From positions 1 to 64,000 of IMG/VR virus record IMGVR_UViG_3300034158_000023: 64,000 nt of DNA; one strand, given 5' to 3'. Both the position numbers and the translations under genes were made by a program. Within the stretch, counting starts at the first letter, position 1. Each line of letters starts with the position of its first letter. Below, in pieces: positions 6,100 through 61,227 of this stretch. Under the pieces are notes generated by a model. The model saw only the letters and a list, made by a program, of their open reading frames with translations. It was not told the origin of the DNA and ran no database searches.

Positions 6100-6132
6100 T
6101 TAGGGAGAGGTTGACTCTCCCTAATATGCCGT
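6100..6132 (+). terminator. hairpin followed by TATGCCGT
   Basis: TTAGGGAGAG/CTCTCCCTAA stem, then TATGCCGT at 6125-6132; no U-tract. Confidence 0.7.
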
Positions 6133-6160
6133 TTACCTATTAAAATAAAAGGATTCTGTA

Positions 6161-7000
6161 ATGGAACTTACTAAAATGATTTCTGATGATTATGCAGCAA
6201 CAGTAGTAGCACTTAACCAAGTGTCTAAGCATGCTACTTGTATTGAAAGAGCAATTTCTTTATATGTGGCAAAACCTTGGTTAGCCCCATTTGCTAAGTT
6301 AGATATGCCTACCATGCTGCATTTAGCTAAGGAATATTTAGTACACTGCACGATGATGAACTCAGTGTCTACAGCTAAAGCTACTGGGGATTGGTCTGAG
6401 GTTACCTATGAGGGTTACGCGTGGCTAGTAAAAACCTTTGATGAGTATTATCGCTACTCAGAGGACTCTACAGTTTACCGTAATGGCGAACTTACGGAAA
6501 TGGGGATTAGAGCCTGTAGGCTAGCTCATCCTGAATATGTGGAACTGGCTAAGGTTAAGTCGCTAGACGAGATTATCACACCTAACCCTGTTGGGGATTT
6601 CTGGAAAGCGTTAGAAGTTGCTATGCCTACTGATATCTGGTCTATGTTATTTGATCTACCTGTCCATCAGGTTGATGCAGTGTTAGAGTTGCGTTTAACT
6701 TTAGATGCGTTTGATGCAAGTACTAAGCAGCTTAAAACTCGTGCTAAGGTGCGATTCATTCACACTAAAAACACCAATAACAAAACCCCAGTGTTAGCAC
6801 TATCTGCACAACAAAAACGTTGGGTTGAAATTATACTCAGCCACCTTGATGTAATCAATACTTTACCTGACCGAGTCACCTGTCAGTTAAAGCACATTGG
6901 TTTATCTACAGTAGATGTCCCTGAAGGTGGTTCGTTCATCAAGAAAAGTGCATTAACTTGGGTTCGTAACTACGATACAGCTTGGGCGTTGATTCTGTAA
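6161..7000 (+). CDS. hypothetical protein
   Basis: 279-aa ORF with AATAAAAGGA leader. Confidence 0.8.
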   Translation: MELTKMISDDYAATVVALNQVSKHATCIERAISLYVAKPWLAPFAKLDMPTMLHLAKEYLVHCTMMNSVSTAKATGDWSEVTYEGYAWLVKTFDEYYRYSEDSTVYRNGELTEMGIRACRLAHPEYVELAKVKSLDEIITPNPVGDFWKALEVAMPTDIWSMLFDLPVHQVDAVLELRLTLDAFDASTKQLKTRAKVRFIHTKNTNNKTPVLALSAQQKRWVEIILSHLDVINTLPDRVTCQLKHIGLSTVDVPEGGSFIKKSALTWVRNYDTAWALIL

Positions 7001-7004
7001 CTTA

Positions 7005-7039
7005 ACGGCATAAGGAGGGAGCTAATGCTCCCTCCTTTT
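7005..7039. terminator. bidirectional terminator with ACGGCATA flank
   Basis: ACGGCATA + AAGGAGGGAGC-TAAT-GCTCCCTCCTT between convergent genes. Confidence 0.85.
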
Positions 7040-7638
7040 CACCGCTTTTCTAAAGCACTTATTTTTTTGTTAAGTTCTACTAGGTTAGTGTAGTACTTAG
7101 CAGATACAGCTTGACATGCAGTTAACTGTAGAACTACTTCGTCTGCTCTATCGGCTTCGGTGATAAGAAATCCAGCAGCCGCGTCCGAAAGTTCTGCTCT
7201 CTCGGTATCATCACTGAGGCCGGAGGTGGTGGCACTACCATTGGAGTCAGTATCACAACTGGTTCTAACTTTGGCTCGCTTGAGGTCGATTGACAACCGC
7301 TTATTAGCAGCAGCATACTCAGCAATAATAGCTTCAGGTTTCTTCTTCCCATCTTGTAACCCCTTTTGGTAACTTTCATCTATATGGTTAAATGCTACAT
7401 TCAGTTGATCAGCAAAATCATTAGTCAGCTTAGTAACCTCTTGTTGCAACTTCAGGTTCTTTTCCAAGTTAACTGTCTTTTCGTTTTCCAGCGCAGTTAT
7501 GATCGGTGATAACTCCATGTACTTTTCTAAGTTACCGAACGTCTTACCTAAATTATAAGCACTTGCGACCATTGCCGCAACCGCTAAGCAAATGAATATG
7601 GTCAACCAGTTGTCTTTTAAAAACTTAAGGAGTATCAT
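7039..7638 (-). CDS. Rz: i-spanin (Rz-like)
   Basis: N-terminal TM, coiled coil, C-terminal RAELS..AA.FL...A..AD....QL.ACQ typical of Rz-like proteins; start reassigned to ATG 7638 behind GAGG; contains an embedded lipoprotein gene. Confidence 0.88.
   Translation of the reverse strand: MILLKFLKDNWLTIFICLAVAAMVASAYNLGKTFGNLEKYMELSPIITALENEKTVNLEKNLKLQQEVTKLTNDFADQLNVAFNHIDESYQKGLQDGKKKPEAIIAEYAAANKRLSIDLKRAKVRTSCDTDSNGSATTSGLSDDTERAELSDAAAGFLITEADRADEVVLQLTACQAVSAKYYTNLVELNKKISALEKR
7134..7352 (-). CDS. Rz1: o-spanin lipoprotein (Rz1-like), embedded in Rz
   Basis: MGRRNLKLLLLSMLLLISG|C lipobox, Pro-rich mature part, alternative frame inside the i-spanin, AAAAGGGG RBS before ATG 7352. Confidence 0.88.
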   Translation of the reverse strand: MGRRNLKLLLLSMLLLISGCQSTSSEPKLEPVVILTPMVVPPPPASVMIPREQNFRTRLLDFLSPKPIEQTK

Positions 7639-8875
7639 CAACAGGAACCTCAATCGTTTTAGAAATAATTAAGAACCTAGCTAACGCTGGTAGTTTAGGT
7701 TCGGTAGTAACTCTATGCATTGGCGTACCAGTCCAACCAGCACGATCGGTCAGCTCAAAGGCAAACTGATCTTGTAAGTACTTAGCCGTACGAAGCACCC
7801 AACCGTTACGTTGGTCAGAGATACTATATTCAGCTATTTTACCATCACCTAGGATTAATGGGTATCTAGGTTTCGTGTAAGTGTAGTACACTCCAGGTAA
7901 CCCAGAGTATTCAACTTCCATAGTACTTACGTTCAAGTCTTTGGTATCTATCAATACAATAAAGGACTGTGATAAACTAAACCATTCTGCAATAACTGCG
8001 TCGCTCATTAAGCTAGCGTAAGCATACGTGCCATTAGGTAAAACTTCTACCTTAAGTGGCGATAGATCAATATCTTTTTTGGCTAAGTTAAAACGTTTAA
8101 CCCAGCTGTAGCGATAGAAATCAAACTTCAATACGTTATCACTAACAGCAGAATAGAGTCCATCTAGTGCGTGTAGGAAGCCACCTAACACTAGGAATGG
8201 AGTTTTGCCTGCCATGCTAACTGGTGACTTGATATAAACGCTTTCTTTATAAGACGCCGACTCAGAGCGTTTAAATAACATGCTCTTAGTTATTGGATAA
8301 CACTTAATAGCACCGATAGATTGGAAATCTAAGAGACCTACCTGAGTATCATCGCCAATACGTCCAGTCTTACAACCGTCATAAATACAGACCCCTTCAG
8401 CTACAGTATCAGCTAAGTGCACAAACCCGTTAACTGTGAATAACCCATACTTAGTTAGGTTATCTTTATTACCTGTAGGATGAGTACCATAAAGGTCTCT
8501 CTGTTGGTCCCAGGAGATATCCATATCTGGATGCATGGATCTGTTCATAGGCTTAAAACTAAAACCACAGTTCCATAACTGCAAAGACCTAACCGTTTTA
8601 TAATCTAAAGCGACCTCAGTAGGTTCTACAGGTAAAGTAGTATTACCGATAGATTGTAAATACTGCGTTAAAGTATAATGCTGGATTTTAACTTCAGGTG
8701 GCAGTTTAGCCATGTTGAGAATGAACTTACCACTTACAACCGAATGGGTTAAGGTAAGATACACACTAACGTATTTAGTGTAAATGTCAGCCATTGACAT
8801 GTTGCCAACATCAACTGGATGGTACTTACCATCTAGGTTATCTAGCAGACCTACGGCTGAAAGCATTTGATACAT
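7625..8875 (-). CDS. virion structural protein (phiKZ-like conserved)
   Basis: Start at ATG 8875 behind AAGGAG; LFTVNGFVH and PFLVLGGFLH motifs as recalled for phiKZ-like virion proteins; divergent from the tail fibre genes. Confidence 0.7.
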   Translation of the reverse strand: MYQMLSAVGLLDNLDGKYHPVDVGNMSMADIYTKYVSVYLTLTHSVVSGKFILNMAKLPPEVKIQHYTLTQYLQSIGNTTLPVEPTEVALDYKTVRSLQLWNCGFSFKPMNRSMHPDMDISWDQQRDLYGTHPTGNKDNLTKYGLFTVNGFVHLADTVAEGVCIYDGCKTGRIGDDTQVGLLDFQSIGAIKCYPITKSMLFKRSESASYKESVYIKSPVSMAGKTPFLVLGGFLHALDGLYSAVSDNVLKFDFYRYSWVKRFNLAKKDIDLSPLKVEVLPNGTYAYASLMSDAVIAEWFSLSQSFIVLIDTKDLNVSTMEVEYSGLPGVYYTYTKPRYPLILGDGKIAEYSISDQRNGWVLRTAKYLQDQFAFELTDRAGWTGTPMHRVTTEPKLPALARFLIISKTIEVPVDDTP

Positions 8876-11220: not shown

Positions 11221-14200
11221 ATGTCAGGTTACCTATTACGCGTAATTGACCTAGACACCATATTTGAACCTCTAGCTCCAGGGGATGCTCGTTATCCCCT
11301 GGACACTGGTTTCTTTAGTGAAAACAATGTAGATGCTAAAGACAAATACGCGCAATTAGCGCTAGGTGATCGTTACCATGAAAACGTTGGTCACGTTAGA
11401 CTAGATACTGACTTGCGTGACATTTTTGCCGCTTTAGGTTCAGTACCTCGTTTTAATCCTTTACCATGGTTAGACAATACTGGCCCTATAACTACTCCGG
11501 TAATTTATAGACAGCCATCAAGAGCACTGTTAACCAAAGTGGATTTAGCTTGCCGTATTTTAGCAGATGGCCGTTGTGAGATAACTGCACAATCCCCTGA
11601 TATCCACAGCAACCCCAATGCAAGAAAAAATGACGTGCTGTATTCATTAGCCCAACCACCGTTGTGGGATGAAGCTAAGGTGCCAGCAGGTGTAGACTTC
11701 GAAGTACGTTACGAGTTAGTTAGTGGGACTGGTTGGACTCTAGATGGGGGCATTCCTTTTGATGCATGGACCAGACTTACCGTTGGGCATCCAGGGACTA
11801 CTTTACGTGGTCAGTTAGTTTACAACCATGCTACTCAAGCTGAAGGGTCAATCGTATCTCAACCTAAAGTCAGAATACATTTACGTAGAACTGACTTCCC
11901 TAACACTAACAAAACCTCTGGGGTTATCACAGCGAATCTAACGTTGTCAGTTAATCCTAGTTTATTCATTCCTGTTAGTGCATGGACTAAAACTATTAGT
12001 AGTACTAACAATGCTGCTACTAACTATCACAATCCAGATGGTAACACTGGTAGTTTCCCTGCTAACGCCAAAGCTGAGTTTAACCTAAACGGTACTTTAA
12101 ACTTCTTCACGATGAACCACACTGGAGCATGGGTTTTAGTTTTAAGTACTAGATGGAGAAGAGATGACGCAGAGACAGCAACAACTGACTATGATGTTTT
12201 ATGTGAAGTAGTCGGCATAACGGGTGGCGGTTCATTAGGTAACCCAGTTGCTGCGTGGACTCAAGTGACGCAAGGTTATGTGATTATGTTGTCTAGTGCA
12301 GCTGCTAACAGCGCTGCTCCAGGTACATACACAGACACCCGCACCATTCGATTAAGCGTTCGTCAAAGATCTACTCGTGGTTATAGAGAAGGTGGTGCGC
12401 TGTTACCAGATAACTTTGTGTCTGGTGATTTCGTACTATCTAACACTGTGGTTGTTAAACCGCCTCTACCTTTAGAGTGGCCTAGTATTGCTGGTTGGAG
12501 TGGGGATTTCAGTGAGACTAAAACTGTTGAACTCAACCCAGGTGTATCGGGGGCGTTAAGTGAAGCCATTAGACTTACATTTGATGCCAGCGGTTCTGTG
12601 ATTGTAGGTAGCACCCAGAAACAACTAGGTAGCGGTAGTTGGTTACCGCCTGGCGTTAACCCTAGCCAAATAGAAATGCGGTCAGTAATGACGGCGTCTG
12701 GAACTGGAGCAGGACATGCTACTGGTTCTGAGTGGGATGAACTGAAAGCTAATTGGGTTTCATTTGCAGCTGGTACTAAAGTGTTGCAATCTTCTATTGC
12801 TATCACTCCAGCCGTAGGTTCAGCTTACCGACAGTATCAGGGTTCTATCCAGATGCGTAGAAAATCATATCCTAGTGATGTGGTTACTATACCTTTACGT
12901 TTATGGTCTCAGGTAGAGTATGGTGCACCACCTGCTTATCAGTGGCCTGCTACTAACTGGGCAGGGGTTAGAACTGCTAAACACTCTGTACCTTTCACAC
13001 CGGAGAACCCTAACGCTATTGCTGAAATGATTGGTATTTATTTTAGCAGTAACGGTAACGTTTCTATTAACCGTAGTGTGCATGGCTCAGCTGACAACAC
13101 TCAGTTAAGTGCTGGTAAATGGTTACCTACTGGGATTGCTGCTAGTGATGTAGAAATTTTAGTAAGTGGTAATTTCTCTGGTTCTGCTGGTGCTGATGTT
13201 AACCAATTGGGGACATGGACACAAGTTTTAACTGGCTCTAAGTATCTGATGGTACAGGTTAGTCACAACTCTGCTGTATCTGGGTTAGGGGCCTCATCTC
13301 GTAACTTTACAGGCACGATCTCATTGCGTCGTAAGTTATACCCTAGTGATGTCATTACGTTTAACGTGGATTTAACTCCCACTGCTGAAATCACTGCCCC
13401 AGTTGCTCCTAACTGGACTGGTATGACGTTACCAGATTTGGTTTACACGGTAACTAAAGACTTAGACCATTTGAGACCGAATTTGTTTGAAACTGTTATG
13501 GTTAGCTACATCATGCATTATGGTACTGGCACCTCAGCTAAGAACGTGGTAGGTCATCACCTTTACGACACTCAGATATCTGGTGCTCCGGATGGCATAG
13601 ATTCTGATATAGTGGTAGTTAACACGCGGATCACTCCAGATGGTTGGAGTCCAGCTGACTTTGAATGGTCTTTCCGTGTAATCTCTGGTAATGTGGATAA
13701 CGTTGATCCAGGGGTTTGGAAAGGGATGTCTAATGCGTCTTATAGCGTACAGTTAGGTGTTACCACTAACCACGGTATGGGTGCAGGTACTTATAAACGT
13801 TCTGGTGTTATAGCCATCGACGTTAGACGTAAAGCCTATCCTAGTCAAATGTATACGTTTACCTGTAAGTTAGAACCAACTATTGTACTTGTGCAAAATG
13901 GTCCTGCTTGGGGGATGATTACTTTACCTGACCATGCTACTACGGTTAACGCAGGTGCGGGGCAAAACTATCCAGGAGAGTCTGATGCTGACGTTTGTTC
14001 AACTGGTTACCAAATTGCTGTAAACGATAGCGGGGTAAACAGTTTCTTAAACAAACACAGTTACTATGGCTCTGATGTGGTACCAGGTAAAATTGACAAC
14101 GTTGTGGATGCTAGGTTCACTCCAAGTAACTGGGATGTGGATGACCTCGAATGGAAATATGATATTGTTTCTGAGGTAGGCGGGAAATTCCAAGCAGGGT

Positions 14201-16418: not shown

Positions 16419-17018
16419 ATGGCAAAATTAACTAAATGGGAAATCATCAAAGACAAAACAGCTGTAGAAGCTGGTCATGTGGATGACCCTGATGACCTAG
16501 GTAAAGCTACCCATCATGGTATCACCCAAGAAACTTCATTAGAGTGGAAACACTTGTGGCCTAAGTACAACTGGAATGGTGACATGCGTACCATGCCACG
16601 TGAATTGGCTTATGAGATTTATGATTTGGGTTGGTGGCAAAGACTGGGACTGGATAGTGTGCTTATCCTCTCTGATTCGCTCGCAGAGCGCATGTTCGAC
16701 TTTGGGATTAACGCAGGTAGGGCAAATGCTGTTCGTTCGTTACAGCGCATCCTAAACGTTATGAACAAGCGTGGAAGCTTGTGGCCAGATCTTAATCCTG
16801 ATGGAGGATGGGGGGATAAGACATACCGGACGCTAGAAACGTGTTTGAGGATGTCTGATGAAAACTTAAGTAACGTTGAGTATGTGATGTTCTGCATGCA
16901 GACGTATCACTACGTAGACATCAGTGAGAAACGTGAAGCTAATGAGAAGTTCACTAACGGTTGGTTCAATCGGGTACGACGCGATTGTCGAACATACTGG
17001 CAGCGTTACTTTAGTTAG
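16419..17018 (+). CDS. endolysin, glycoside hydrolase family 108 with C-terminal peptidoglycan-binding domain
   Basis: EAGHVDDPDDLGKATHHGIT (the EGGY..P.D.GG.T..GIT motif), FDFGINAG, LQR.LN and F..GWFNR. Confidence 0.9.
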   Translation: MAKLTKWEIIKDKTAVEAGHVDDPDDLGKATHHGITQETSLEWKHLWPKYNWNGDMRTMPRELAYEIYDLGWWQRLGLDSVLILSDSLAERMFDFGINAGRANAVRSLQRILNVMNKRGSLWPDLNPDGGWGDKTYRTLETCLRMSDENLSNVEYVMFCMQTYHYVDISEKREANEKFTNGWFNRVRRDCRTYWQRYFS

Positions 17019-17059
17019 ACAGCATAATTAGGAGGAGCTTAGCTCCTCCTGTATGCCGT
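17019..17059 (+). terminator. hairpin flanked by ACAGCATA and TATGCCGT
   Basis: AGGAGGAGCT/AGCTCCTCCT stem at 17030-17050. Confidence 0.8.
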
Positions 17060-17447: not shown

Positions 17448-17623
17448 AATGTAAAATGTGTTTTATTTTACACAGAGTCTCTATATTTATGTATCTTTAT
17501 ATCTTGAAGGCTCTCCTACGACGTAGTCGTCTATGCTGTTTATATATAAAGAGAGATTTAAAACTAATACTAGAGGGAGGGGATAAACCCTCCCGTTATC
17601 TCTAAAAACAAAAGGAATGTACC

Positions 17624-19395: not shown

Positions 19396-19761
19396 ATGAG
19401 CTTAATCCATATACCGCGATCTATTGAGACTAATGTGCTTATGGCTGTACTTAAAGCCTTACTAGGTCAAAATGCTATTGCCGTAGAACAAGCGCAAGAA
19501 GCTATGCGTAAAGTAAAAGTGATTAACATTTTACGCGTAGTGGTTAACACGAAGAAGACTGAGGTTACGGTTTATGTCAATCGTAAAAAAGTACTTACTT
19601 ATACAGGGTTTGTTGCCTTACCTAGAGTAGCTACTTTAGAAGCTCATGCTTTAGTGAGCTCATCTGTCCCTCACGAAATTGCAACTAGTGAATTATTCAA
19701 TAAAGCCGATACCGTCCTGTCTAGACAAGGTGGTGGGTATTGGACATTCTCTGGTAAATAA
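19396..19761 (+). CDS. hypothetical protein
   Basis: 121-aa ORF, AAGGAG RBS. Confidence 0.75.
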   Translation: MSLIHIPRSIETNVLMAVLKALLGQNAIAVEQAQEAMRKVKVINILRVVVNTKKTEVTVYVNRKKVLTYTGFVALPRVATLEAHALVSSSVPHEIATSELFNKADTVLSRQGGGYWTFSGK

Positions 19762-20235: not shown

Positions 20236-21597
20236 ATGTCTCTTGGTAACACGTTGGTGCTTGACCTTAACCGTAACAATCCACGCTTCACAGAAGCCCA
20301 GCTTAAATTTGTGGAAGACTCAATCTTACCTAAGTTAGAGTTTTGGGAAATCTGCCAGAATTACATCATTGTCAAACCAGAGTATAAAAATAAACGGTAC
20401 CGTAATAGTGGAATCTTATCGCTGCCGTTTAAATTATGCAAATTAATTTTATCTACCGCCAATCAAACAGAGGAGCAAGATTTTCTAGCGGAAGTAAATT
20501 GCAAACACCCAAATAACACTATTGGTTTAGTTAGTGTCTGTATAAAACCAGGCAGCATAGAGTTAAAAAATTATGCTCCAATTAAATGCACTATTACCGT
20601 AATATGTAGAATAGAGGTTATGCATTACGGTGGGGAGCATACTAAATCACATCTTGTTACCATGGAATACCCATGGGTAGCACAAGAAACTCAAAATAAT
20701 AAAAGGAATACTGAAGTGGCTACTAAAATTGTTAAACCGCACACTCGTAAAAACATCCCAGTTGTAGTAAACTTAGATAACTTCACAGCCGAAGACATCG
20801 GAGCGTTAGATGCTGAGTTATCTAACAATTTCCCATGTTGGAGACGTGACCACGGGTTAGTCTCCGTAGACGTGGAAAACTTCCCAGTGTACAAAAACAC
20901 GGGCACTCGTACAGACGTGTCTTTAAATTTAGCAATCGGTCATGGGGTGAAGTTACGTCCAGAAGACGATGCTATTCGTACAGGAATAGTAGATGAAACT
21001 ATTGCTCTGGTAAGCATTGATCTATTACCTACTAGACAACTGTGTTTCCGATTCATCATTAGTTATTACAAAAACAATCACTCTAAAGCTAAAAGTCTGC
21101 ATCACATGGAGTATATGGTTGACTTAGAACCAGAAACGTCAGATGTGCGTATCACTAGTTCTACAGTGAATGATAACGGTAAACTAATCCTCACAACTTC
21201 TGAAAGGGAGCAAATAAACACAGAGGTTGTAGTTGAAACTCCATTAACAGATGAAGACATTTGGTTAAAGTTAGTAAGCGTGCTGCTTTGGTACTGTGCA
21301 CAACCTACGGATTTAAATGTGTACATGAACAGTTTAAAAGCTGCTTTTAATATAACGCCAACTATTAAAACTGTGTTCTATTGCCATGTGAGTAAAATCC
21401 CAGATGATGTATCCGTAGCTATAGAACTATTTGCCAAGTGGCGGGATAAGTTTCCTTTGTTAACCGCTTTATTCTACATGTTAGAAATTCGTCGTTTAAA
21501 TGGAAAAGAGCAGTACGGCATATTTCCAGATCTAGAATTCACGTTTACTCTTGACCGCATGCGAGCAAGCTTTACCGAAATCAAACGCATAAGTTAA
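20236..21597 (+). CDS. hypothetical repeat protein, paralogue of 21657..22955
   Basis: Two internal repeats (F/C-W... and TI(G/A)LVS), plus a C-terminal DIW..LV..L...F.ITP domain shared with the next gene. Confidence 0.8.
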   Translation: MSLGNTLVLDLNRNNPRFTEAQLKFVEDSILPKLEFWEICQNYIIVKPEYKNKRYRNSGILSLPFKLCKLILSTANQTEEQDFLAEVNCKHPNNTIGLVSVCIKPGSIELKNYAPIKCTITVICRIEVMHYGGEHTKSHLVTMEYPWVAQETQNNKRNTEVATKIVKPHTRKNIPVVVNLDNFTAEDIGALDAELSNNFPCWRRDHGLVSVDVENFPVYKNTGTRTDVSLNLAIGHGVKLRPEDDAIRTGIVDETIALVSIDLLPTRQLCFRFIISYYKNNHSKAKSLHHMEYMVDLEPETSDVRITSSTVNDNGKLILTTSEREQINTEVVVETPLTDEDIWLKLVSVLLWYCAQPTDLNVYMNSLKAAFNITPTIKTVFYCHVSKIPDDVSVAIELFAKWRDKFPLLTALFYMLEIRRLNGKEQYGIFPDLEFTFTLDRMRASFTEIKRIS

Positions 21598-24124: not shown

Positions 24125-24160
24125 ACGGCAAAAATAGGAGCATTGCGCTCCTATTTTTTT
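24125..24160. terminator. bidirectional terminator
   Basis: ACGGC-AAAAATAGGAGC-ATTGC-GCTCCTATTTTT between convergent genes. Confidence 0.85.
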
Positions 24161-25205: not shown

Positions 25206-27668
25206 ATGTCTATATTAAAAATTCTATATTTGCGTTTAGTTAAAAACCGTCGTTTGTTGTCTAAAGGTACTATGGAGGTTGTCTACACACCAGAGTCACC
25301 CATGCAGTTGATCTTAGGATCCAACGGTTATGGTAAAAGTACCTTAGCAGAAGAAATGTCCGTGTTACCAGGGGTTCCCAAGAACTATAGGAAAGGAGGT
25401 TCCAAGCACGTCATTGCTGAATTTAACGAATCTAAGTATGAGCTCATAAGTAACTTCGAAAGCTCGCCATACCATTCGTTCTTAAAAGATGGCGTAGAAC
25501 TTAACGATGGTCACACCTTTTCCGTACAGAAAATGTTAGTAGAACAGCATTTCCAATACACCAGCGATATACATGCGCTACTGTTAGGAAAACTAAAATT
25601 TACTCGCATGACTACGGCACAAAGAAAAGACTGGTTAGTTAAACTGTCGCCTAACGATGTGAGTTATGCTATCAACTTATATAAAGACTTATTGGTACAG
25701 TCTAGAAACGTTGCAGGAGCTTCTAAGCACACCGCTACGAAGATAGTAGAGACTACCGCAGCACTACTACCTCCTGAAGTCGTTGAATCCTTACAAGAGC
25801 AGTCACAAGCTTTAATCGCTACTATCCAGCAACTGCATAACTTAAAAACTAACAGTCCTGTGGATCCTTCCACTGAGGTAACTATAAGTAACTTTAAAGG
25901 CTCTGCGGAAAGCCTGAGAAAGACTTTAGTAGCACAGAAGGCCATGGTAAGGGAAAAGTATAATCCAGCGTTAGAATTGGAATTAGATGCCATTACGATA
26001 GCTCACGCTAAAGCATCTCAAGCATTGACTAGTGAGCTAAAGGAGTTTGAACGTTGTGAAGAAATTCTGAGTAACATAGTTTACTCCGATGGGCGTACTA
26101 ACGAAGAGATAGAAGAAGAAACTGAGACCTTCCGTAGATTTCTCAAGTGTGGTTATGATCGCAAAGGTTTCATCAAACCTAAGTTGCCAGTTCAAGGAGA
26201 GAAAACGCTTCTAGCTATCATGGGCGGGTTCTTAGATAACCTAAGTGATGTAACTCCTAACCCAGATAAAACGTTGTTTAATCCAGAGAAGGAAAAAGGT
26301 AATCGATTAGCTGCTCATCAGTTGGGTATAGAGATAGCTAAGAATGAAAACTTCTTACTTAGAGCTCACTCCAAACTAGATGAACTTAACAATGCCATTA
26401 AAGTTAACTGTGGTAAGTGCGGTCACGAATGGTTGTTAAATCATGATGAGACTGAAAAGGCTAGAGTGGAAGCTTTCATCAAAGGCACTACTAGTTTAAT
26501 AGAAAACCAAAAGTTAGAGTTAGCTGACATTGAAGTCTGGATAACTGATTGTGCTAAATGGAACCGTCAGTTTGAATATCTGTTAGGGTTAGAAAGGAAT
26601 TTCCCTGAGTTAGATTTTCTTATTGACTACGTGTTAACTAGCGGGATGTTTTTCAATACTCCAGAGCAACTTAGGTATATATTACCTAAGTGTGTATCAT
26701 ACGTACAAAAACGAGTAGAAGAACTTGAGTTAGAGGAAAAAATAAAACTTAACACCAGTATTCTAGAACGTCGTCGTAGTGAAGAGCAGTCTAATACTGT
26801 ATCTGTTCGCACTAGGTTACAAGAACTAGAAAAAGAAATTGAACAAGGCCATTTACAAGTAGATGTCTTAGCTAAACAAAAAGTACAAGTAGAGGATACC
26901 TTACGCAATTATAAAACTTTGAAACAAACTTACCAGTCTACTCTAGTAGCTATGGATAAGTTCATAGAGGCTAGTAAGAAAAAGCTTCTAACTGATTTAG
27001 ATGTAATGTTGACAGCAGAGCTAGATGTGTTATACGGACAACTAGCTAAACTGAATGAAACCATTTCAGATGTTAAGTCCAAGGAAGCTATCTTAAAACA
27101 TTTAAACGCTTCAAAAGTAGAGCTAGAAGAAGATAATGAAATATATAAAATGTTGATCGAACATATCTCACCCTCAAGTGGTTTGATCGCCGACGTGTTA
27201 TTAGGATTCATTAAAACTCTTACTGCTCAACTAAATGACTTGATCAGAAAAGTATGGACTACCCCACTGTTTATTATGCCGTGTGGTATGGACTCTACTG
27301 ATCTTAATTACAAGTTCCCATTACAGTCTAAGGATAATCAAAATGGAAGTGCCGATGTATCTGAAGCTAGTGAAGGTGAGTTGGAGTTAATCGACTTTGT
27401 GTTTATGATGGTGGCCAGACACTACCTAGGTTATGGTAAGTATCCATTATACCTAGATGAAGTCGGTAGATGTTTCCATGAAACCCATAGAGCCAACTTG
27501 TACAACTATGTTAAGCTGTTAATAGAAGCAGGGCTAGTATGTCAAGTATTTGTTATTAGTCACTTTGAATCCACTTATAAAACTTTAACCCATGCAGATG
27601 TTAACGTGATGGATCCTACAGGTGTATTAGTCACCCCTGGAGCCAACAAATGTCTGCAAATTAAATAG
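25206..27668 (+). CDS. sbcC: SbcC/Rad50-like SMC ATPase
   Basis: Walker A GSNGYGKST, coiled coils, central CGKC zinc hook, signature ASEGE, Walker B LYLDE, H-loop ISH. Confidence 0.93.
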   Translation: MSILKILYLRLVKNRRLLSKGTMEVVYTPESPMQLILGSNGYGKSTLAEEMSVLPGVPKNYRKGGSKHVIAEFNESKYELISNFESSPYHSFLKDGVELNDGHTFSVQKMLVEQHFQYTSDIHALLLGKLKFTRMTTAQRKDWLVKLSPNDVSYAINLYKDLLVQSRNVAGASKHTATKIVETTAALLPPEVVESLQEQSQALIATIQQLHNLKTNSPVDPSTEVTISNFKGSAESLRKTLVAQKAMVREKYNPALELELDAITIAHAKASQALTSELKEFERCEEILSNIVYSDGRTNEEIEEETETFRRFLKCGYDRKGFIKPKLPVQGEKTLLAIMGGFLDNLSDVTPNPDKTLFNPEKEKGNRLAAHQLGIEIAKNENFLLRAHSKLDELNNAIKVNCGKCGHEWLLNHDETEKARVEAFIKGTTSLIENQKLELADIEVWITDCAKWNRQFEYLLGLERNFPELDFLIDYVLTSGMFFNTPEQLRYILPKCVSYVQKRVEELELEEKIKLNTSILERRRSEEQSNTVSVRTRLQELEKEIEQGHLQVDVLAKQKVQVEDTLRNYKTLKQTYQSTLVAMDKFIEASKKKLLTDLDVMLTAELDVLYGQLAKLNETISDVKSKEAILKHLNASKVELEEDNEIYKMLIEHISPSSGLIADVLLGFIKTLTAQLNDLIRKVWTTPLFIMPCGMDSTDLNYKFPLQSKDNQNGSADVSEASEGELELIDFVFMMVARHYLGYGKYPLYLDEVGRCFHETHRANLYNYVKLLIEAGLVCQVFVISHFESTYKTLTHADVNVMDPTGVLVTPGANKCLQIK

Positions 27669-30135: not shown

Positions 30136-30177
30136 ACGGCATAAGAGGAGCTCCTAGGAGCTCCTCTGCTATGCTGT
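30136..30177. terminator. bidirectional hairpin flanked by ACGGCATA and TATGCTGT
   Basis: AGAGGAGCTCC-TA-GGAGCTCCTCT between convergent genes. Confidence 0.85.
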
Positions 30178-35030: not shown

Positions 35031-35074
35031 AGAGTAGGGTGTCCTAGGACACCCTACTCTCTTATATTTGCCGC
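35031..35074. terminator. bidirectional hairpin
   Basis: 14-bp stem AGAGTAGGGTGTCC/GGACACCCTACTCT, then TTTGCCGC; between convergent genes. Confidence 0.85.
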
Positions 35075-39210: not shown

Positions 39211-39934
39211 CTACTTACTAGATCTAGATAGCTTATTCGATACCAGACTAGGGGTACTTAGTTTGTTAGGGGATGATGCAGTAGATTCACTAACGCATGA
39301 TAACTATGCTAAACGTGAAGACGAAAGTTTCCTAATGGCTATCCCAGGGTACAAGGAACGATGGGAGGCAAGAGACATAGAAGTGTTGCAATCCTCCCAA
39401 GTATCTAAGTTCTTTGCTACGGCAATGCAGTTGATTCTAGATGACGTTCATGATGTCAACGTGTCACTACCAGATAGAAAGTTCTTTCTGTACATAAACA
39501 CGTATCCGTATAAATTGAACGATATCGAGAAAGAAGATCTTGTGTTAATGGTATCTGCTCAGCTACACGGTAGAGTTAAAGTTACCACTAGGAGTTTTAG
39601 TCTAGGGGCATTATCTCCTAGAACTATAGCTTCGAACTGCTATGGTCTAGTGTCGATATATGAGTTTGAGAAATGGGTAAAGCTGCACATAGATGCACTT
39701 TATAAACTGTCTTTAAGTGAGGTAGTTGTAGTAGCTCCAGAGTTAAAGGAAATAGGTGCTAAAGTAATTGAAAAACCTACGGAACTTATGTTACAACTAT
39801 TAGAACGATACTCTAAGTGGGAATGCTTAGAGTTAGCGCTAATGGAAGTACTAGCTTTGAAGTATTACCCAGTCGCCGAGTATTGCAGTTTGCTTTATTT
39901 AGCGCACATAACCGAGCAAAAAGAGGAAGGGTAA
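39182..39934 (+). CDS. conserved phiKZ-like hypothetical protein with HAD-like N-terminal motif
   Basis: LLDLDSLFDTRLG (DxD) and INTYPY.L. Confidence 0.7.
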   Translation: MVKLSPLVSNYLLDLDSLFDTRLGVLSLLGDDAVDSLTHDNYAKREDESFLMAIPGYKERWEARDIEVLQSSQVSKFFATAMQLILDDVHDVNVSLPDRKFFLYINTYPYKLNDIEKEDLVLMVSAQLHGRVKVTTRSFSLGALSPRTIASNCYGLVSIYEFEKWVKLHIDALYKLSLSEVVVVAPELKEIGAKVIEKPTELMLQLLERYSKWECLELALMEVLALKYYPVAEYCSLLYLAHITEQKEEG

Positions 39935-39956
39935 CCCCTTCCTCTTCATATGTCGT
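39921..39956. terminator. hairpin followed by TATGTCGT
   Basis: AAGAGGAAGGG-TAAC-CCCTTCCTCTT between convergent genes. Confidence 0.8.
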
Positions 39957-41368: not shown

Positions 41369-41376
41369 GAGTGGAT

Positions 41377-42420
41377 ATGGCTAGTAAAATTGCCAAAGGT
41401 ACAGCATCTACTGGGCCAGATGATTCGCTAATAGCAGTAGATGCTAATGGCACTACAACAGACATGGTGTTAAGTAAAGTTTTAAGTACTTCTAACACTG
41501 TCGGTGGTACCATTATAGACACCGCTAAAAAGACAGCTCTTGACCCAAAAGCTTTAGCTAAAGCCATATCAGTTGAAGATGGTAAATTTTCATTATCTAC
41601 CAAGTCATTAAAAGATATAATGACTAAAGGGTTATTGAAAAAGGGACTAGGAGCTCGAGTAGGTGGAGTAGCTGGTCCTAACTTGACTGGGATACCTGGA
41701 TTAAGTAAAACCCAAACTGGGTTAGCTGAAAAGTATTTAGGGGAGTTAATCGGTAGTGATAATACTGACCTTGTAAACAAAGCTGGTAAGCTATTCAAGA
41801 TCGGTAATGGGATTGACACCTCAAGTGCATCAGGGTTAATGAAAGGTATAGCTAAGCTTGCAGATTTCCCAGACTTTGCAAACATAGCTGACCAACACTC
41901 ATTCACCGCAAGTGCGTTAGCTTATCTAGATACTGCAATATCAATGGGGATTCCTGATGCTATTGATGTACTCTTAGGTAAAATCAAAGACGATAAGTTA
42001 AAGCGTAAACGCATCTTAGCTAACGTCAGAGGTGCAGTCCTTAGAGCAGACATTCCAATCATCAAGAAAATCATTTCTTATATTGGAGCTAGAGCAGTAG
42101 TAGATCAAGTTCCTGACGCTTGCGTGTATATTCTAGCAGCGTACAATTTCCCTCGTGGAACGCTCCCTAAGGACTATCCAGGTTTAAGGGCAGAGTTACT
42201 AGGGTTATTGGAAGAACTCGATTCTGAGTGGGATAGAGAGCGTCGTAATGGGGTTCTAGTGAGTAAGTTAGATCCGTTCACTAGAATATCCAGAGCAGCT
42301 AAGTCTATATTGCAATTACAGCCTGACTATGATGTACCTATGGCCATGGCATTGACTTATAAGAAAGTGGATTTGAATGCTGTACTTAAGAAGTCATACC
42401 CGCTAATGGTTAAGTTATAA
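41377..42420 (+). CDS. hypothetical protein, probably virion-associated
   Basis: ATG 41377 behind AGGAG; TGPDD.L..VD N-terminal motif. Confidence 0.75.
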   Translation: MASKIAKGTASTGPDDSLIAVDANGTTTDMVLSKVLSTSNTVGGTIIDTAKKTALDPKALAKAISVEDGKFSLSTKSLKDIMTKGLLKKGLGARVGGVAGPNLTGIPGLSKTQTGLAEKYLGELIGSDNTDLVNKAGKLFKIGNGIDTSSASGLMKGIAKLADFPDFANIADQHSFTASALAYLDTAISMGIPDAIDVLLGKIKDDKLKRKRILANVRGAVLRADIPIIKKIISYIGARAVVDQVPDACVYILAAYNFPRGTLPKDYPGLRAELLGLLEELDSEWDRERRNGVLVSKLDPFTRISRAAKSILQLQPDYDVPMAMALTYKKVDLNAVLKKSYPLMVKL

Positions 42421-42469
42421 CGGCATAGGGAGAGAGCTTTCGCTCTCTCCCGTTATGCTCTTTTTTTTT
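42420..42469. terminator. bidirectional terminator with ACGGCATA flank
   Basis: GGGAGAGAGC-TTTC-GCTCTCTCCC, then TATGCTC and a T run. Confidence 0.85.
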
Positions 42470-55400: not shown

Positions 55401-56608
55401 ACGACTTACGTGGTATGCGAGGAGACTGGATCTTCAACGTGGATGAAACTGCTCGCATTTTAAGTACCTCTACCTTATTAGGTGTTGGTGCAACTACCGA
55501 CGATATGAAACGCGCCGTGTTTAGTGGTGTGCAACATTCACACGTAGTTGCTACAGTAGGTTATGGAGTTTGTGCTGTACAGACTGGCTATGAAACTGTT
55601 TTAGCGCATCGGGTATCTGATACGTTTGCGGTTACTGTAGATAGTCCTGCAACTCTAGTCCATGTATCTAATGACCACATCGTTATTGAGTACGATGATC
55701 CTGATCGTCCTAACGATAAAATACCTATTGGTATCAAGTATGGTGTCAGTACAGGCCACGCTATCTTACATGATGTGATCTGTGATTTACCGCAAGGTAC
55801 TAAGTTGAAAGCTGGTCACGTGGTTGCATTCAACCGTGGGTTCTTTGCTCGTAACTATATAGATCCTTCACAGGTAACTTGGAAGACTGGTGCATATGCT
55901 ACCGTCATGTTGGTTGACGATGATGATACTCTAGAAGACTCCTCAGCAATCTCACCTGAGTTAGCTGGCAAACTCTTAAGACCGACTGTCGATTATCGTG
56001 AGGTAACTTTACGGTTTGATCAAGGGATTTTGGATCTAGTGAAGGAAGGGGATAAGGTAGAAGTTGACTCCATTCTATGTAGTATAGAGGATTCTGTCAC
56101 CAGTGGCGGTAACTTGTTTGATGACACCACCAAAGACTCTCTTAAATTACTAGCACGGAATACACCTAAAGCTAAAACTGTAGGGGTTATAGGTAAAGTA
56201 GAGGTTCTGTACTGTGGCGACACAGAAGATCTATCTCCTTCACTAGCCGAGTTAGTATTAGCTGCTGACAAGAAAAGAACCAAATATGCTAAGTCGATAG
56301 GTAGTAAAGTGTTGACTGGACAGGTAAACGATTTAGATCTAGATACTGTGAAAATCGGTATTTATATTAATCGTGAAACCAAGATGGCTGATGGCGATAA
56401 GTTGGTAGTTGGCAACCAGTTAAAATCCGTTGTTAAACGTGTTATGACTGGTAAGAATGAAACGCTGAGCGGCAAACGAATTGATGCTAAATTCGGCAAC
56501 CTAAGTGTTGACGCGCGGATAGTAGGTGGGCCTGCAAAAGCTGGAACTACTATAGTACTAGTAGAAATGGCAAACAAACGCGCCGCGTCTGCATATAGAA
56601 ACAAATGA
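52403..56608 (+). CDS. virion RNA polymerase beta subunit, large part (phiKZ gp178-like)
   Basis: LEDSSAIS, GDKLVVGNQLKSVV and D.KRA.F...Q..H beta motifs; ATGA coupling to the beta-prime gene. Confidence 0.92.
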   Translation: MIEPAFGLEDFSDGLESLRYEHYYRKHGVKTFKSLLAPRYSSMENLELPLKSVLHYLPELSSELGIMPTNVFLRNHSGMILVHNAEAYVEPEGTPMLAAAKPTQLTLQYRKAARSLRPMRSYETAFRNDKTLVIENYCFLNHLYRYRNTFMARIYKFNNLMRVFVAKVNEIAEISDRKQFLELRLPKQQILLQRFIMGSKRTSRQTLGFFPDDHSLFLLELWKFMGENRETSALAGLTPKAIASLQFVLIETGKYNVLSLGLLENSRDGASEPASTTYKPRQIQLTFYKYLNSGYELRNVANKQVIEVRENENGEETLVTIGEDGEETVLDVDSVDDLDVMTEAETQEAMDESESGQEIDFDLEDELDPGVQESEVYIPVDDSDLDDVPVEVTELSAGVVAESLKLLELGLISAAAHKRNEQLATAYKRIPNPWGQGTLADAIVVDPAKLAVRNPKFVEDISFVMDKSMLKSGLKNFDRDYVDNVMNSDIAGMVVNLQKAGVIIHNYRVEEKEDANNHFDVHYVQMSLVEGKVSTVAFRVPRVTKDGTFRARGTNYRLRKQRVDIPIRKTAENEVGLTSYVSKVFVTRSVMKVHDYTSWLQSQILRQVEAGVIKHVDYGNVFDRTVKTPRAHSTIAAKYTMFAVGDLNFDWNLKTFTAMPDIDVPALLKEGLCPCGFKGKELLVIDTLGVVSLGSTSEPIGNIEEILGIESAKAPVDTIFVKVLDKQIPISVIMAYHLGLTNYLKSLKVPYRLVAKGSKLDLTPDEFTIKFSDTTLILNRNHQRSALAVSGFNVFKKSISKYPMMEFDSEDVYGAVFDQEGLGGRYLRELKITNDLWVDPITLGILAKRKEPTEWLAILRYSIELLTSDTHPAEGAGTMRRTRGYERISGHVYSEMVRSVRKAKSRPLTANAAIELNPNAVWMNIQKDASVGIVNELNPVEETKEVELMTFAGSGGRTGRTMVHSTRGFDHEDLGTVSEAGVDNSNVAVNTYSVPDPNIDDLRGMRGDWIFNVDETARILSTSTLLGVGATTDDMKRAVFSGVQHSHVVATVGYGVCAVQTGYETVLAHRVSDTFAVTVDSPATLVHVSNDHIVIEYDDPDRPNDKIPIGIKYGVSTGHAILHDVICDLPQGTKLKAGHVVAFNRGFFARNYIDPSQVTWKTGAYATVMLVDDDDTLEDSSAISPELAGKLLRPTVDYREVTLRFDQGILDLVKEGDKVEVDSILCSIEDSVTSGGNLFDDTTKDSLKLLARNTPKAKTVGVIGKVEVLYCGDTEDLSPSLAELVLAADKKRTKYAKSIGSKVLTGQVNDLDLDTVKIGIYINRETKMADGDKLVVGNQLKSVVKRVMTGKNETLSGKRIDAKFGNLSVDARIVGGPAKAGTTIVLVEMANKRAASAYRNK

Positions 56609-59667: not shown

Positions 59668-59683
59668 TTAAATGGGGTAGTGT

Positions 59684-60442
59684 ATGTCTAAACAAACTAT
59701 CGCGTTTGGTTGTACTGCTTTAATGGGTACTAACAAAGGCGGGATCTTAAAGCCTGATGCTGATGGTTATTATACCGTTATCTTAGGCGCACTAGATTTT
59801 GAGAACTCTTATGGTGCCGTCTATCCTTTAGTCAGCGCTAAGGAAATCTTTAAAGAGTCTAGTGGCTTTATGCGTCGTTTGCGTAAAGGTTATTGTCGTG
59901 GTGAATACGGGCATCCTAAAAGACTGCCTGGACAAGATCACGATAGTTTCATTCGCCGCATTATGACGATTGAAGAAACTCGTATCTGTATGCATATTGC
60001 TGAGGCGTGGATCGATTATGATTCTGTGCAACATCAAGGCAAGAAGATAGTTACCATTTGGGGTAAGATTCGTCCAGAAGGCCCTTACGGTGCTTACCTG
60101 AAAGAGTCGTTAGATAATCCTAAGTGTAACGTAGCGTTCTCTCTGCGTAGTATCACTTTAGATGAATACATCAATGGTCGTTTACATAAGAACATCGATG
60201 ACATCGCTTGTTGGGATTTCGTGGTAGAACCTGGTCTAGCTGTAGCTAACAAGTACGCCAACCCTGCATTAGAAGAGTTCTCTACTGTTGCGGTACCTAT
60301 CAGCATGGTTAAACATTTAGTGGCGCAGGAAGATGGTCACTTCGGTTTAGAGTCTGCTGACATGTTACGAGAGTTAGTAACAAGGGTAGAAGCACAAAAT
60401 CCTAAGGCAGCTTATAAAGTTGCTCCTAGCGCAAACTGGTAA
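59684..60442 (+). CDS. prohead maturation protease (phiKZ gp175-like)
   Basis: GEYGHP (His), NVAFSLRS (Ser) and WDFVVEPG (Asp). Confidence 0.92.
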   Translation: MSKQTIAFGCTALMGTNKGGILKPDADGYYTVILGALDFENSYGAVYPLVSAKEIFKESSGFMRRLRKGYCRGEYGHPKRLPGQDHDSFIRRIMTIEETRICMHIAEAWIDYDSVQHQGKKIVTIWGKIRPEGPYGAYLKESLDNPKCNVAFSLRSITLDEYINGRLHKNIDDIACWDFVVEPGLAVANKYANPALEEFSTVAVPISMVKHLVAQEDGHFGLESADMLRELVTRVEAQNPKAAYKVAPSANW

Positions 60443-60445
60443 TCT

Positions 60446-60479
60446 TAGATGGATGGGGCAACCCATCCATCTATACCGT
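60446..60479 (+). terminator. hairpin followed by TATACCGT
   Basis: TAGATGGATGGG-GCAA-CCCATCCATCTA. Confidence 0.75.
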
Positions 60480-60510
60480 AATGTTATGGTCTCACCTAAA
60501 AGGAATCCCC

Positions 60511-61185
60511 ATGTCTAGAAAAATTATGTTAGTTACACCAGTTACGGTAACCAATGATCTACCTGTGTTATCTGCTGGTTCTGTACTAAAGAAACCAGAT
60601 GCTCCTATGTTTAATGAACCGTTAGACCATAACTACACTGGTGAAGAACTACTCGCAATAATGAAAAAGCATAACGTCGAGTTAGTAGGTGGAGTTAAGA
60701 TCCTTCCTGGAGTATTAAACAGTTTAAGCCCTGACTACGTGTTTGAGTTATATATGAACACACGTTACGGTTTGCCTACTTCTCCATCAGTAATGCCAGT
60801 GCGTGCTATGCAGGCATATTCCACATCGTATTTGGCACTGAAAGCTTACCCTGTAGTAAGTTTACTGTTTAGTAGTTTGTATCAAGAGAACATAGCTACG
60901 ATCAATCCACTAACTAAATATGAATCTGAGAACATGGTGCGTATCTTACGTCATGTTAACTACAGTTGGTTAGAGGCAGCTAAACGTTTTGAACTAGCCC
61001 CTCAGGACGCAGCTAAAGTGATTGTAAGTAAAGCATTAGAATCACAACGTCTAGGTACTCTAGTGGAAACTCATGACATCTATTACCTCAATGCCGATAA
61101 TGCTAACCCATTGCTCGTGAATGGCGTTACAGTCAACGATCTAGTTGACTACTATGAATCTACTGGCTTACAACCTACAGCTTAA
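60511..61185 (+). CDS. hypothetical protein
   Basis: Start reassigned to ATG 60511 behind TAAAAGGAATCCCC. Confidence 0.75.
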   Translation: MSRKIMLVTPVTVTNDLPVLSAGSVLKKPDAPMFNEPLDHNYTGEELLAIMKKHNVELVGGVKILPGVLNSLSPDYVFELYMNTRYGLPTSPSVMPVRAMQAYSTSYLALKAYPVVSLLFSSLYQENIATINPLTKYESENMVRILRHVNYSWLEAAKRFELAPQDAAKVIVSKALESQRLGTLVETHDIYYLNADNANPLLVNGVTVNDLVDYYESTGLQPTA

Positions 61186-61227
61186 CCAGCATACACAGGG
61201 AGCGTTTAAACGCTCCCTTTATGCCGT
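61186..61227 (+). terminator. hairpin flanked by CCAGCATA and TATGCCGT
   Basis: AGGGAGCGTT/AACGCTCCCT stem. Confidence 0.8.

What the first reader, a model, noticed from the sequence alone, without database searches (positions are those of the whole stretch)
6100..61227. Intergenic hairpins carry a conserved flanking motif TATGCCGT instead of, or as well as, a U-tract
Seen: exact TATGCCGT or its reverse complement ACGGCATA lies 0-3 nt from hairpins with unrelated stems at 6125, 7005, 17052, 19788, 30136, 42420 and 61220. Variants with 1-2 mismatches occur at 17019, 17532, 24125, 30170, 35067, 39949, 42454, 60472 and 61186. The motif usually lies 3' of the stem relative to an incoming gene, and on both sides at some junctions (17019/17052, 30136/30170, 42420/42454, 61186/61220). 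Several of these stems (6100, 19768, 30144, 60446) have no U-tract. Inference: a sequence-specific termination or RNA-processing signal read by the phage's own RNAPs or a phage factor. Alternatives are an mRNA 3'-end tag for export from the phage nucleus, or re-initiation, since TATG is also the phiKZ late-promoter core.
Basis: partly seen in the sequence, partly recalled or inferred. Interest (0 to 1): 0.68.

Follow-up and report, generated by a model that had tools for sequence, protein, structure and literature searches.

The report
phiKZ-type terminator box after hairpins
The TATGCCGT word next to intergenic hairpins is real and far from random, but it is the conserved transcription-terminator motif already mapped by RNA 3'-end sequencing in the related giant phages phiKZ and 201phi2-1, here found in a distant relative.

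Summary
TATGCCGT occurs 9 times in the window (1.6 expected) and 25 times in the 215-kb genome. All 17 intergenic copies lie 0-2 nt 3' of a GC-rich hairpin on the motif strand; none of the 8 coding copies has a hairpin.

The window belongs to a divergent phiKZ-like jumbo phage. The box tracks the upstream gene: 27 of 33 hairpin+box sites lie 15-47 nt past the stop of a co-oriented gene, and 18 face an oncoming gene. It is therefore not a promoter in general.

The same element (GC hairpin + TTATKYYGT) was published as the conserved terminator motif of phiKZ, and a similar one in 201phi2-1. I placed the eight TTS coordinates printed for 201phi2-1 on its genome. All eight fall in one register, hairpin-TTTATGY[Y]GT, 7-8 nt after the stem. 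The box therefore stands where a U-tract would, and GT lies just downstream. Those terminators also work in uninfected host cells.

T-run terminators in this genome end in the same GCYGT.

Verdict: a new member of a known kind. Why the box is conserved (a pause signal for the phage RNA polymerases?) remains open.

The parts
6100..6132 (+). Terminator after the gene at 5393-6094: hairpin 6100-6124 (10 bp), then box TATGCCGT 6125-6132. Predicted RNA 3' end near 6130.
   Evidence: orientation
7005..7037 (-). Terminator of the minus-strand gene 7039-7653: hairpin 7012-7037, box on the minus strand 7012->7005. Convergent with 6161-7000(+), for which the same hairpin is followed by TTTTCACC.
17019..17059 (+). 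Terminator after 16419-17018: 5' half-copy ACAGCATA 17019-17026, hairpin 17030-17050, box 17052-17059. The half-copy pairs with the box and lengthens the stem. An early-promoter-like TATATATT starts 17 nt after the box.
   Evidence: In the relative contig the stem changes on both arms while the box is unchanged
17516..17602 (+). Non-coding unit: weak hairpin + TATGCTGT (17532-17539) + TATATATA + short leader + hairpin 17575-17594 + degenerate box gTTATCTCT.
   Evidence: two paralogous copies elsewhere in the genome
19768..19795 (+). Terminator after 19396-19761: hairpin 19768-19785 (UUCG loop), spacer TC, box 19788-19795. The next start codon is 23 nt downstream.
   Evidence: the relative contig has TATGCCGC here
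24125..24158 (.). Two-way terminator between 22964-24115(+) and 24159-25139(-): hairpin 24130-24158. On the minus strand it reads T-run + GCCGT (TTTTTGCCGT, 24134->24125).
30136..30177 (.). Two-way terminator between 28866-30125(+) and 30178-30792(-): ACGGCATA 30136-30143, palindromic hairpin 30144-30167, TATGCTGT 30170-30177.
   Evidence: identical in the relative contig
35031..35074 (+). Terminator after 34644-35027: hairpin 35031-35060, CTTATA, then TTTGCCGC 35067-35074. Faces 35076-35918(-).
39921..39956 (+). Terminator at the end of 39182-39934: hairpin about 39921-39946, box variant TATGTCGT 39949-39956. Faces 39958-40446(-).
42420..42461 (.). Two-way terminator between 41371-42420(+) and 42471-44480(-): ACGGCATA 42420-42427, hairpin 42428-42451, gTTATGCTCT + T-run from 42453.
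60446..60479 (+). Terminator after 59684-60442: hairpin 60446-60473 overlapping the box variant TATACCGT 60472-60479.
61186..61227 (+). Terminator after 60481-61185: 5' half-copy CCAGCATA 61186-61193, hairpin 61197-61218, box 61220-61227. TATATATT starts 17 nt after the box.
103..132 (+). T-run form of the same design: hairpin 103-118, T9, then GCGGT 128-132.
21515..21522 (-). Exact copy inside an ORF with no hairpin: background occurrence.
27275..27282 (+). Exact copy inside an ORF with no hairpin: background occurrence.

Best explanation
These are transcription terminators of the type conserved in phiKZ-like jumbo phages: a GC-rich RNA hairpin followed by a short U/A-rich stretch and the box G-C-Y-G-U (here mostly UAUGCCGU).

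The box occupies the place of the U-tract. By analogy with the mapped ends in 201phi2-1, the RNA should end at the second pyrimidine after the G (TATGC[C]GT), about 6-9 nt past the stem. The last GT would then be the next template bases.

Inferred mechanism: the hairpin forms while the polymerase sits on a weak proximal hybrid (UAU) and hesitates at a pyrimidine(-1)/G(+1) step, the rule known for the elemental pause of multisubunit RNAPs. The hairpin then strips the transcript. Where a 5' copy ACGGCATA is present, it pairs with the box and lengthens the stem. At convergent junctions it also supplies the box for the other strand.

Shown: placement, orientation, enrichment, conservation across phages, and RNA ends in a relative. 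Inferred: the pause step, and which polymerase reads it.
For: - All 17 intergenic exact copies follow a hairpin; none of the 8 coding copies does.
- 27 of 33 hairpin+box sites lie 15-47 nt after the stop of a co-oriented gene.
- The phage is phiKZ-like: two vRNAP beta-type genes (PHROG 2986 and 3148) lie at 50775-56608, and a homologue of the nvRNAP subunit gp123 is present.
- Published motif at 61 phiKZ terminators predicted intrinsic, among 133 ONT-mapped termination regions: BCCYCCCCHWWDGGGRRGGBYTTATKYYGT (PMC10914365). In 201phi2-1, motif A at 59 of 132 TTS resembles it (PMC11512511).
- All 8 TTS coordinates printed for 201phi2-1 fall at hairpin-TTTATGY[Y]GT, 7-8 nt after the stem, with G at -10 and Y-1/G+1.
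- The same hairpin+TATGYYGT is seen in phiKZ, Xoo-sp14, LucasX, Eowyn, PhiEaH1, Ea35-70, Proteus phage 10 and Goslar, at GC 37-58%.
- In a relative contig (81% aa identity) the stem at 17030 changes on both arms while the box stays the same.
- Strand polarity: UUCG loops 7 against CGAA 0, and the 5' arm is purine-rich in 25 of 26 one-way sites.
- T-run terminators share the GCYGT ending.
Against: - There are no RNA data for this phage, so the 3' ends here are predicted, not observed.
- ONT-cappable-seq has about 2-nt resolution and cannot tell termination from 3' processing.
- The G at -10 of the pause consensus is absent here, because the 3' arm is pyrimidine-rich.
- The sequence-specific conservation of GCCGT goes beyond what a generic intrinsic terminator needs and is not explained by the model.
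- A few boxes (17019-, 68081-, 113880-, 152673-, 155441-) lie on a strand with no incoming gene in my crude gene calls.
Confidence: 0.8

Rival explanations
1. The box is a late promoter or re-initiation site. TATG is the phiKZ late-promoter core, with G as +1. nvRNAP would start a new transcript right behind the terminator hairpin.
For: - TATG is necessary for phiKZ nvRNAP initiation (PMC4666361) and is bound as non-template strand in a pocket of gp123 (PMC12809450).
- This phage has a gp123 homologue in which 8 of 14 pocket residues are identical at 30% overall identity.
- TATG without a hairpin lies 30-45 nt upstream of genes in most divergent regions.
- At tandem junctions such as 6125, 19788, 77785 and 84036 the box lies 23-35 nt before the next start codon with no other promoter-like motif between.
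Against: - 18 of 33 sites face an oncoming gene.
- The CCGT extension and the hairpin are absent from the late-promoter-like sites and from phiKZ P119L.
- No conservation downstream of TATG is reported for phiKZ late promoters.
- The published data place 3' ends, not 5' ends, at the motif.
Confidence: 0.15
2. The box is an upstream element of the AT-rich early promoter, and the hairpin merely sits beside it.
For: The end of GCYGT lies exactly 17 nt before TATATAT[T/A/C] at 17052, 61220, 87692, 188126 and at the T-run sites 69324 and 82399. The spacing is 19-20 nt at 153, 154551 and 177434. Terminator-then-early-promoter cassettes with similar spacing also occur in 201phi2-1.
Against: - Most boxes have no such promoter downstream, including all those at convergent junctions.
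- About half of the TATATATT sites (4115, 74979, 85449, 112646, 126069, 139516) have no box.
- The fixed spacing is equally explained by a terminator packed against the upstream edge of a promoter about 35 nt long, or by duplicated cassettes.
Confidence: 0.07
3. The box is an RNA-level site for a protein or a nuclease: 3'-end processing or protection, or an export tag for leaving the phage nucleus. Transcription would end further downstream.
For: The sequence-specific conservation over phages of 37-58% GC exceeds what a plain intrinsic terminator needs. 3'-end sequencing cannot separate termination from trimming.
Against: - 201phi2-1 terminators of this type cut downstream reporter expression in uninfected cells, six of eight at least as well as lambda T0.
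- The mapped 3' end lies inside the box, so the full word is not kept in the RNA.
- The 7-8 nt distance from the stem is that of ordinary hairpin termination.
- No candidate factor was identified.
Confidence: 0.1
4. Chance, or sequencing-adapter contamination. TATGCCGT is part of the Illumina P7 adapter TCGTATGCCGTCTTCTGCTTG.
For: A full-text search for the word is swamped by adapter sequences. At 188126 the match to the adapter runs 11 nt.
Against: - 0 of 100 shuffles reach the observed count.
- Every intergenic copy sits in the same place relative to a hairpin and a gene end.
- The flanks differ from the adapter.
- The motif is present in independently sequenced phages.
Confidence: 0.01

Closest known systems
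Conserved terminator motif of phiKZ (Putzeys et al. 2024, microLife, PMC10914365)
   Same: A GC-rich stem-loop directly followed by TTAT-K-Y-Y-G-T, lying behind genes. It was found at 61 phiKZ terminators predicted intrinsic, among 133 mapped termination regions. The phage family and the pair of multisubunit RNAPs are the same.
   Different: Here the box is more rigid (TATGCCGT against TTATKYYGT). Often only 0-2 nt precede TATG, rather than TT. The arm polarity is reversed: the 5' arm is purine-rich here (GGGAGAG) and pyrimidine-rich in phiKZ (CCYCCCC). RNA ends have not been mapped in this phage.
201phi2-1 terminator motifs A and A/B (PMC11512511)
   Same: Motif A resembles the phiKZ motif, and adding motif B lengthens the stem. 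This matches the ACGGCATA...TATGCCGT pairs seen here at 17019/17052, 30136/30170, 42420/42454 and 61186/61220. The TTS falls inside the box.
   Different: The stem polarity is as in phiKZ. G-10 of the pause consensus is present there and not here.
Canonical intrinsic (Rho-independent) terminator
   Same: GC-rich hairpin; RNA end 7-9 nt after the stem; works without a phage factor in the relative; an upstream complement of the tract strengthens it and makes it two-way.
   Different: Only two or three U's are present. A conserved G-C-Y-G-U word replaces the distal U-tract.
T7 RNAP class II termination or pause signal (ATCTGTT, own knowledge)
   Same: A sequence-specific word that stops a phage polymerase.
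   Different: Class II works without a hairpin and with a single-subunit RNAP. Here a hairpin is always present, and host RNAP also terminates at the relatives' elements.
Consensus elemental pause G-10 Y-1 G+1 of bacterial RNAP (Larson 2014 and Vvedenskaya 2014, own knowledge)
   Same: In 8 of 8 mapped 201phi2-1 ends the 3' base is C or U, the next base is G, and G stands at -10. The box here offers two Y|G steps (U|G and C|G).
   Different: Pausing at these sites has not been measured for any jumbo-phage RNAP. G-10 is missing in this phage.
phiKZ late promoter TATG (Yakunina 2015; gp123 pocket, PMC12809450)
   Same: It shares the four bases TATG, and the gp123 pocket residues are largely kept in this phage.
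   Different: Late promoters have no hairpin and no conserved bases after the G, and they point at the gene they serve.

Membership tests
phiKZ-type conserved terminator | GC-rich stem-loop | tested here: met
   Perfect stems of 7-13 bp, -15 to -28 kcal/mol
phiKZ-type conserved terminator | Stem directly followed by (T)TAT-K-Y-Y-G-T | tested here: met
   17 exact TATGCCGT plus 11 intergenic one-mismatch variants within 0-3 nt of the stem; anchored matrix T-[A/T]-T-G-C-Y-G-T
phiKZ-type conserved terminator | Lies downstream of genes in sense orientation | tested here: met
   27 of 33 sites lie 15-47 nt after the stop of a co-oriented gene
phiKZ-type conserved terminator | Host genome is a phiKZ-like phage with its own multisubunit RNAPs | tested here: met
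   PHROG 3148 and 2986 RNAP beta subunits; gp123 homologue; 313 jumbo-phage records match at no more than 43% identity
phiKZ-type conserved terminator | RNA 3' ends pile up at the element | not testable with these tools
   No RNA run holds this phage. Met in 201phi2-1 for 8 of 8 printed TTS.
Canonical intrinsic terminator | U-tract of about 6-8 U after the hairpin | tested here: not met
   The TATG class has 2-3 T's; a separate T-run class does meet this feature
Canonical intrinsic terminator | Works without accessory factor | not tested
   Only indirect evidence: relatives' elements terminate in uninfected P. chlororaphis
phiKZ late promoter | TATG pointing at the gene it serves, with no need for a hairpin | tested here: not met
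   18 of 33 sites face an oncoming gene; a hairpin is always present
T7 class II terminator | Hairpin-independent conserved word | tested here: not met
   None of the 8 hairpin-less copies is intergenic

The most novel reading that the evidence does not exclude
TATG(YYGT) may be a polymerase-specific signal used twice by Chimalliviridae. The beta-lobe pocket of nvRNAP (gp123) fixes the start site at late promoters by holding the non-template strand TATG. The same pocket might capture TATG during elongation behind a hairpin. This would give a sequence-specific pause that replaces the U-tract, and at tandem junctions it would let the enzyme re-start at the G it has just passed. It would explain why the word is kept from 37% to 58% GC phages.
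Probability: 0.15. Interest if true: 0.7.

Novelty: new member of a known kind. Interest (0 to 1): 0.3.

Why it matters
The result gives a ready rule for annotating transcription-unit ends in phiKZ-like phages that standard terminator finders miss, because there is no U-tract.

It shows the box is kept across distant lineages of the family.

It places the published RNA ends of 201phi2-1 in one register inside the box (Y|GT). That makes the role of each base testable with purified vRNAP and nvRNAP.

It does not reveal a new kind of element.

Tried and rejected
- A megablast of 6 kb against the phage collection gave no match.
- IMG/VR held no relative of the 453-aa protein.
- The word search found one relative contig (Logan SRR9850948, 81% aa identity). 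Only half of it may be held, so only five or six orthologous sites could be compared.
- The search for sequencing runs found two wastewater runs with 5% of the words, kept as contigs and not on record as RNA. Read laying was therefore not used, because contigs cannot show RNA ends.
- The supplementary TTS tables of both ONT-cappable-seq papers are not held. I used the eight coordinates printed in the main text instead.
- Full-text search for the word itself is useless, because it is part of the Illumina P7 adapter. Adapter contamination was rejected.
- Rfam finds nothing in the window.
- The difference in MFE between the terminator strand and its complement is not significant (p = 0.13).
- The 29 sites were aligned for a covariance model. 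The stems came out of register, so no model was built, and the direct lists stand instead.
- A roadblock protein bound to the box was considered and set aside. A block at the box would stall the polymerase inside the stem, not 7-8 nt after it.
Full report
**1. The observation**

TATGCCGT or its complement occurs 9 times in the window, against 1.58 expected; no shuffle of 100 reaches 9. It missed two further exact copies, 21515(-) and 27275(+), which lie inside ORFs and have no hairpin. The nine variants are all present as described. The stems fold at -15 to -28 kcal/mol, except the weak one at 17532.

The window is the first 64 kb of a 215,386-bp genome with 41% GC and a 127-bp terminal direct repeat. 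In the whole genome there are 25 exact copies:
- 17 lie in the 4.7% of the genome that my rough gene calls leave non-coding, and every one sits 0-2 nt 3' of a perfect GC-rich hairpin on the strand that reads TATGCCGT.
- None of the 8 coding copies has a hairpin.

TATGC lies within 5 nt 3' of a GC-rich hairpin in 31 of 126 intergenic flanks, against 1 of 90 coding flanks (Fisher p = 2.6e-7). TATGCCGT is among the most enriched intergenic 8-mers of the genome.

**2. What the genome is**

The long ORFs match PHROG families of phiKZ-like jumbo phages: two RNAP beta-type genes at 50775-52406 and 52403-56608, a giant tail fiber/lysin, and an SbcC-like protein. The best protein matches among 50,697 phage records are Chimalliviridae-type phages, at only 33-43% identity. 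This is therefore a distant lineage of that group. A homologue of the nvRNAP subunit gp123 lies at genome 184024-185634.

**3. Orientation**

I tabulated 33 hairpin+box sites with at most one mismatch.
- 27 lie 15-47 nt after the stop codon of a gene on the same strand.
- 18 point into a gene on the other strand; 12 of these are plain convergent junctions.

The box therefore follows the incoming gene, as a terminator does, and cannot in general be a promoter.

Strand-specific details agree with an RNA-level role. UUCG loops occur 7 times on the terminator strand and CGAA never. The 5' arm is purine-rich in 25 of 26 one-way sites.

**4. A wider consensus**

A second class of hairpins carries a T-run, and that T-run is followed by GC in 9 of 21 cases, against 35 of 412 T-runs genome-wide. 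Anchored on the G, both classes give T-[A/T]-T-G-C-Y-G-T-y-T. TATGCCGT is thus the short-T form of the design: hairpin, U/A-rich stretch, then GCYGU.

**5. It is already described in relatives**

Putzeys et al. 2024 mapped 133 termination regions in phiKZ by ONT-cappable-seq. They report that 61 of them, predicted to be intrinsic terminators, share BCCYCCCCHWWDGGGRRGGBYTTATKYYGT, a stem-loop followed by TTAT and KYYGT (PMC10914365). The 201phi2-1 study found a motif A at 59 of 132 TTS that "strongly resembles" it. It also found a motif B that lengthens the stem when both are present (PMC11512511).

I read 90 kb of phiKZ and saw hairpins followed by TTATGTCAT, TATGTCGT, TTTATGTTGT and TTTATGCTGA, with ACGGCATAT and ACAGCATAA on the 5' side.

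In 30-50-kb samples of other phages the distribution was as follows:
- The same design is present in Xanthomonas Xoo-sp14 (58% GC) and LucasX, Klebsiella Eowyn, Erwinia PhiEaH1 and Ea35-70, Proteus phage 10 and E. coli Goslar.
- It is weaker in Ralstonia RSL2.
- In EL, SEGD1 (SPN3US-like), Vibrio pVa-21 and Bacillus PBS1 I saw only TTAT or T-runs.

**6. Where the RNA ends**

The supplementary tables are not held. The 201phi2-1 paper does print eight TTS coordinates, all with more than 99% termination efficiency. Placed on NC_010821, all eight fall in one register: stem, TTTATG, Y, [Y], GT. The 3' end is the second pyrimidine after the G, 7-8 nt after the stem. The next base is G, and G stands at -10.

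This is the usual distance for hairpin termination, so the box is the stretch that would be in the RNA:DNA hybrid. The Y(-1)/G(+1) and G(-10) pattern is the consensus of the elemental pause of bacterial RNAP (my own knowledge: Larson 2014, Vvedenskaya 2014).

In the same paper all eight elements terminated in uninfected P. chlororaphis, six of them at least as well as lambda T0. Those with the lengthened stem were the strongest. No phage factor is therefore needed for them to act on host RNAP.

**7. Comparison with a close relative**

One metagenomic contig (81% aa identity in the 453-aa protein) is syntenic with window 9-33 kb. The orthologous sites compare as follows:
- At 17030 the stem differs on both arms (AGGAGGAGC/GCTCCTCCT against AGGAGAGC/GCTCTCCT) and the loop differs, while TATGCCGT is unchanged.
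- At 19788 the last T is a C.
- The 30136/30170 element is identical.
- At 24130 the loop is inverted.

**8. The TATG coincidence**

phiKZ nvRNAP starts at the G of TATG (PMC4666361). It holds the non-template TATG in a pocket of gp123 (PMC12809450). In this phage's gp123 homologue, 8 of 14 pocket residues are identical at 30% overall identity.

TATG without a hairpin and without CCGT lies 30-45 nt upstream of genes in most divergent regions, so TATG late promoters probably exist here too. phiKZ P119L itself has no hairpin. The terminator box and the late promoter are therefore different elements that share four bases.

At a few tandem junctions (6125, 19788, 77785, 84036) the box is the only promoter-like word before the next gene. 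Re-initiation there is not excluded.

**9. Relation to early promoters**

An AT-rich TATATATT(ACC) motif, probably the early promoter, lies 17 nt after the end of GCYGT at 17052, 61220, 87692 and 188126, and at the T-run sites 69324 and 82399. About half of these promoter-like sites have no box, and most boxes have no such promoter. I read this as terminators packed against the upstream edge of the promoter.

**10. Verdict**

The motif is, however, the known phiKZ-type terminator motif.

- its presence in a distant lineage;
- its spread over many genera;
- the shared GCYGT ending of the T-run terminators;
- the fixed register of the published 3' ends inside the box.

Whether the phage polymerases read the box base-specifically remains open. 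No RNA data exist for this phage.

Noticed in passing
window 17450-17625; genome 83890-84075 and 152540-152745: Three paralogous non-coding units share one layout: AT-rich hairpin, small hairpin + TATGCTGT (TTTGCCGT in the 83890 copy), TATATATA, a leader of about 25-45 nt (AAGAGAGAT...), then hairpin GGGAGGGgataaaCCCTCCC + TTATG. This looks like a promoter followed at once by a terminator, as for a short non-coding transcript. The window copy is 93% identical to the relative contig, whereas the neighbouring protein is 81% identical.
   Followed up: partly
genome-wide, e.g. window 17077, 61245, 63830: An AT-rich motif TATATATT(ACC), probably the early (vRNAP) promoter, lies 17 nt after the end of the terminator box at six sites, including two T-run terminators.
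   Followed up: partly
window 30144-30167; genome 111319-111340 and 162285-162308: The same perfect palindrome GAGGAGCTCCTAGGAGCTCCTC serves as the terminator stem at three separate junctions. Near-copies lie at 124820 and 188103.
   Followed up: no
window 24130-24158 vs L008 about 12850-12880: The loop of this terminator hairpin is inverted between the two phages (ATTGC against GCAAT), while the stem and the flanks are kept.
   Followed up: no
intergenic regions genome-wide: ATAAAAGG (within AATAAAAGGAAT) is the commonest intergenic 8-mer, with 42 copies. It sits about 8-12 nt before start codons and looks like an unusual extended ribosome-binding context.
   Followed up: no
window 32140-32170: ACTAATTACC upstream of 32187 resembles the phiKZ middle-promoter motif AAanTTACc.
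   Followed up: no
genome 1-127 and 215260-215386: A 127-bp direct terminal repeat, which includes the first terminator hairpin (103-118 = 215362-215377).
   Followed up: yes
genome 188126-188136: TATGCCGTCTT matches 11 nt of the Illumina P7 adapter. Adapter trimmers set to a short minimum overlap could clip reads at these terminators.
   Followed up: no
this genome vs phiKZ, 201phi2-1, LucasX, Goslar: Stem polarity comes in two forms. The 5' arm is purine-rich here and in Xoo-sp14, Eowyn, PhiEaH1 and Ea35-70. It is pyrimidine-rich, with a 3' arm ending GGC + TTTATG, in phiKZ, 201phi2-1, LucasX and Goslar.
   Followed up: partly
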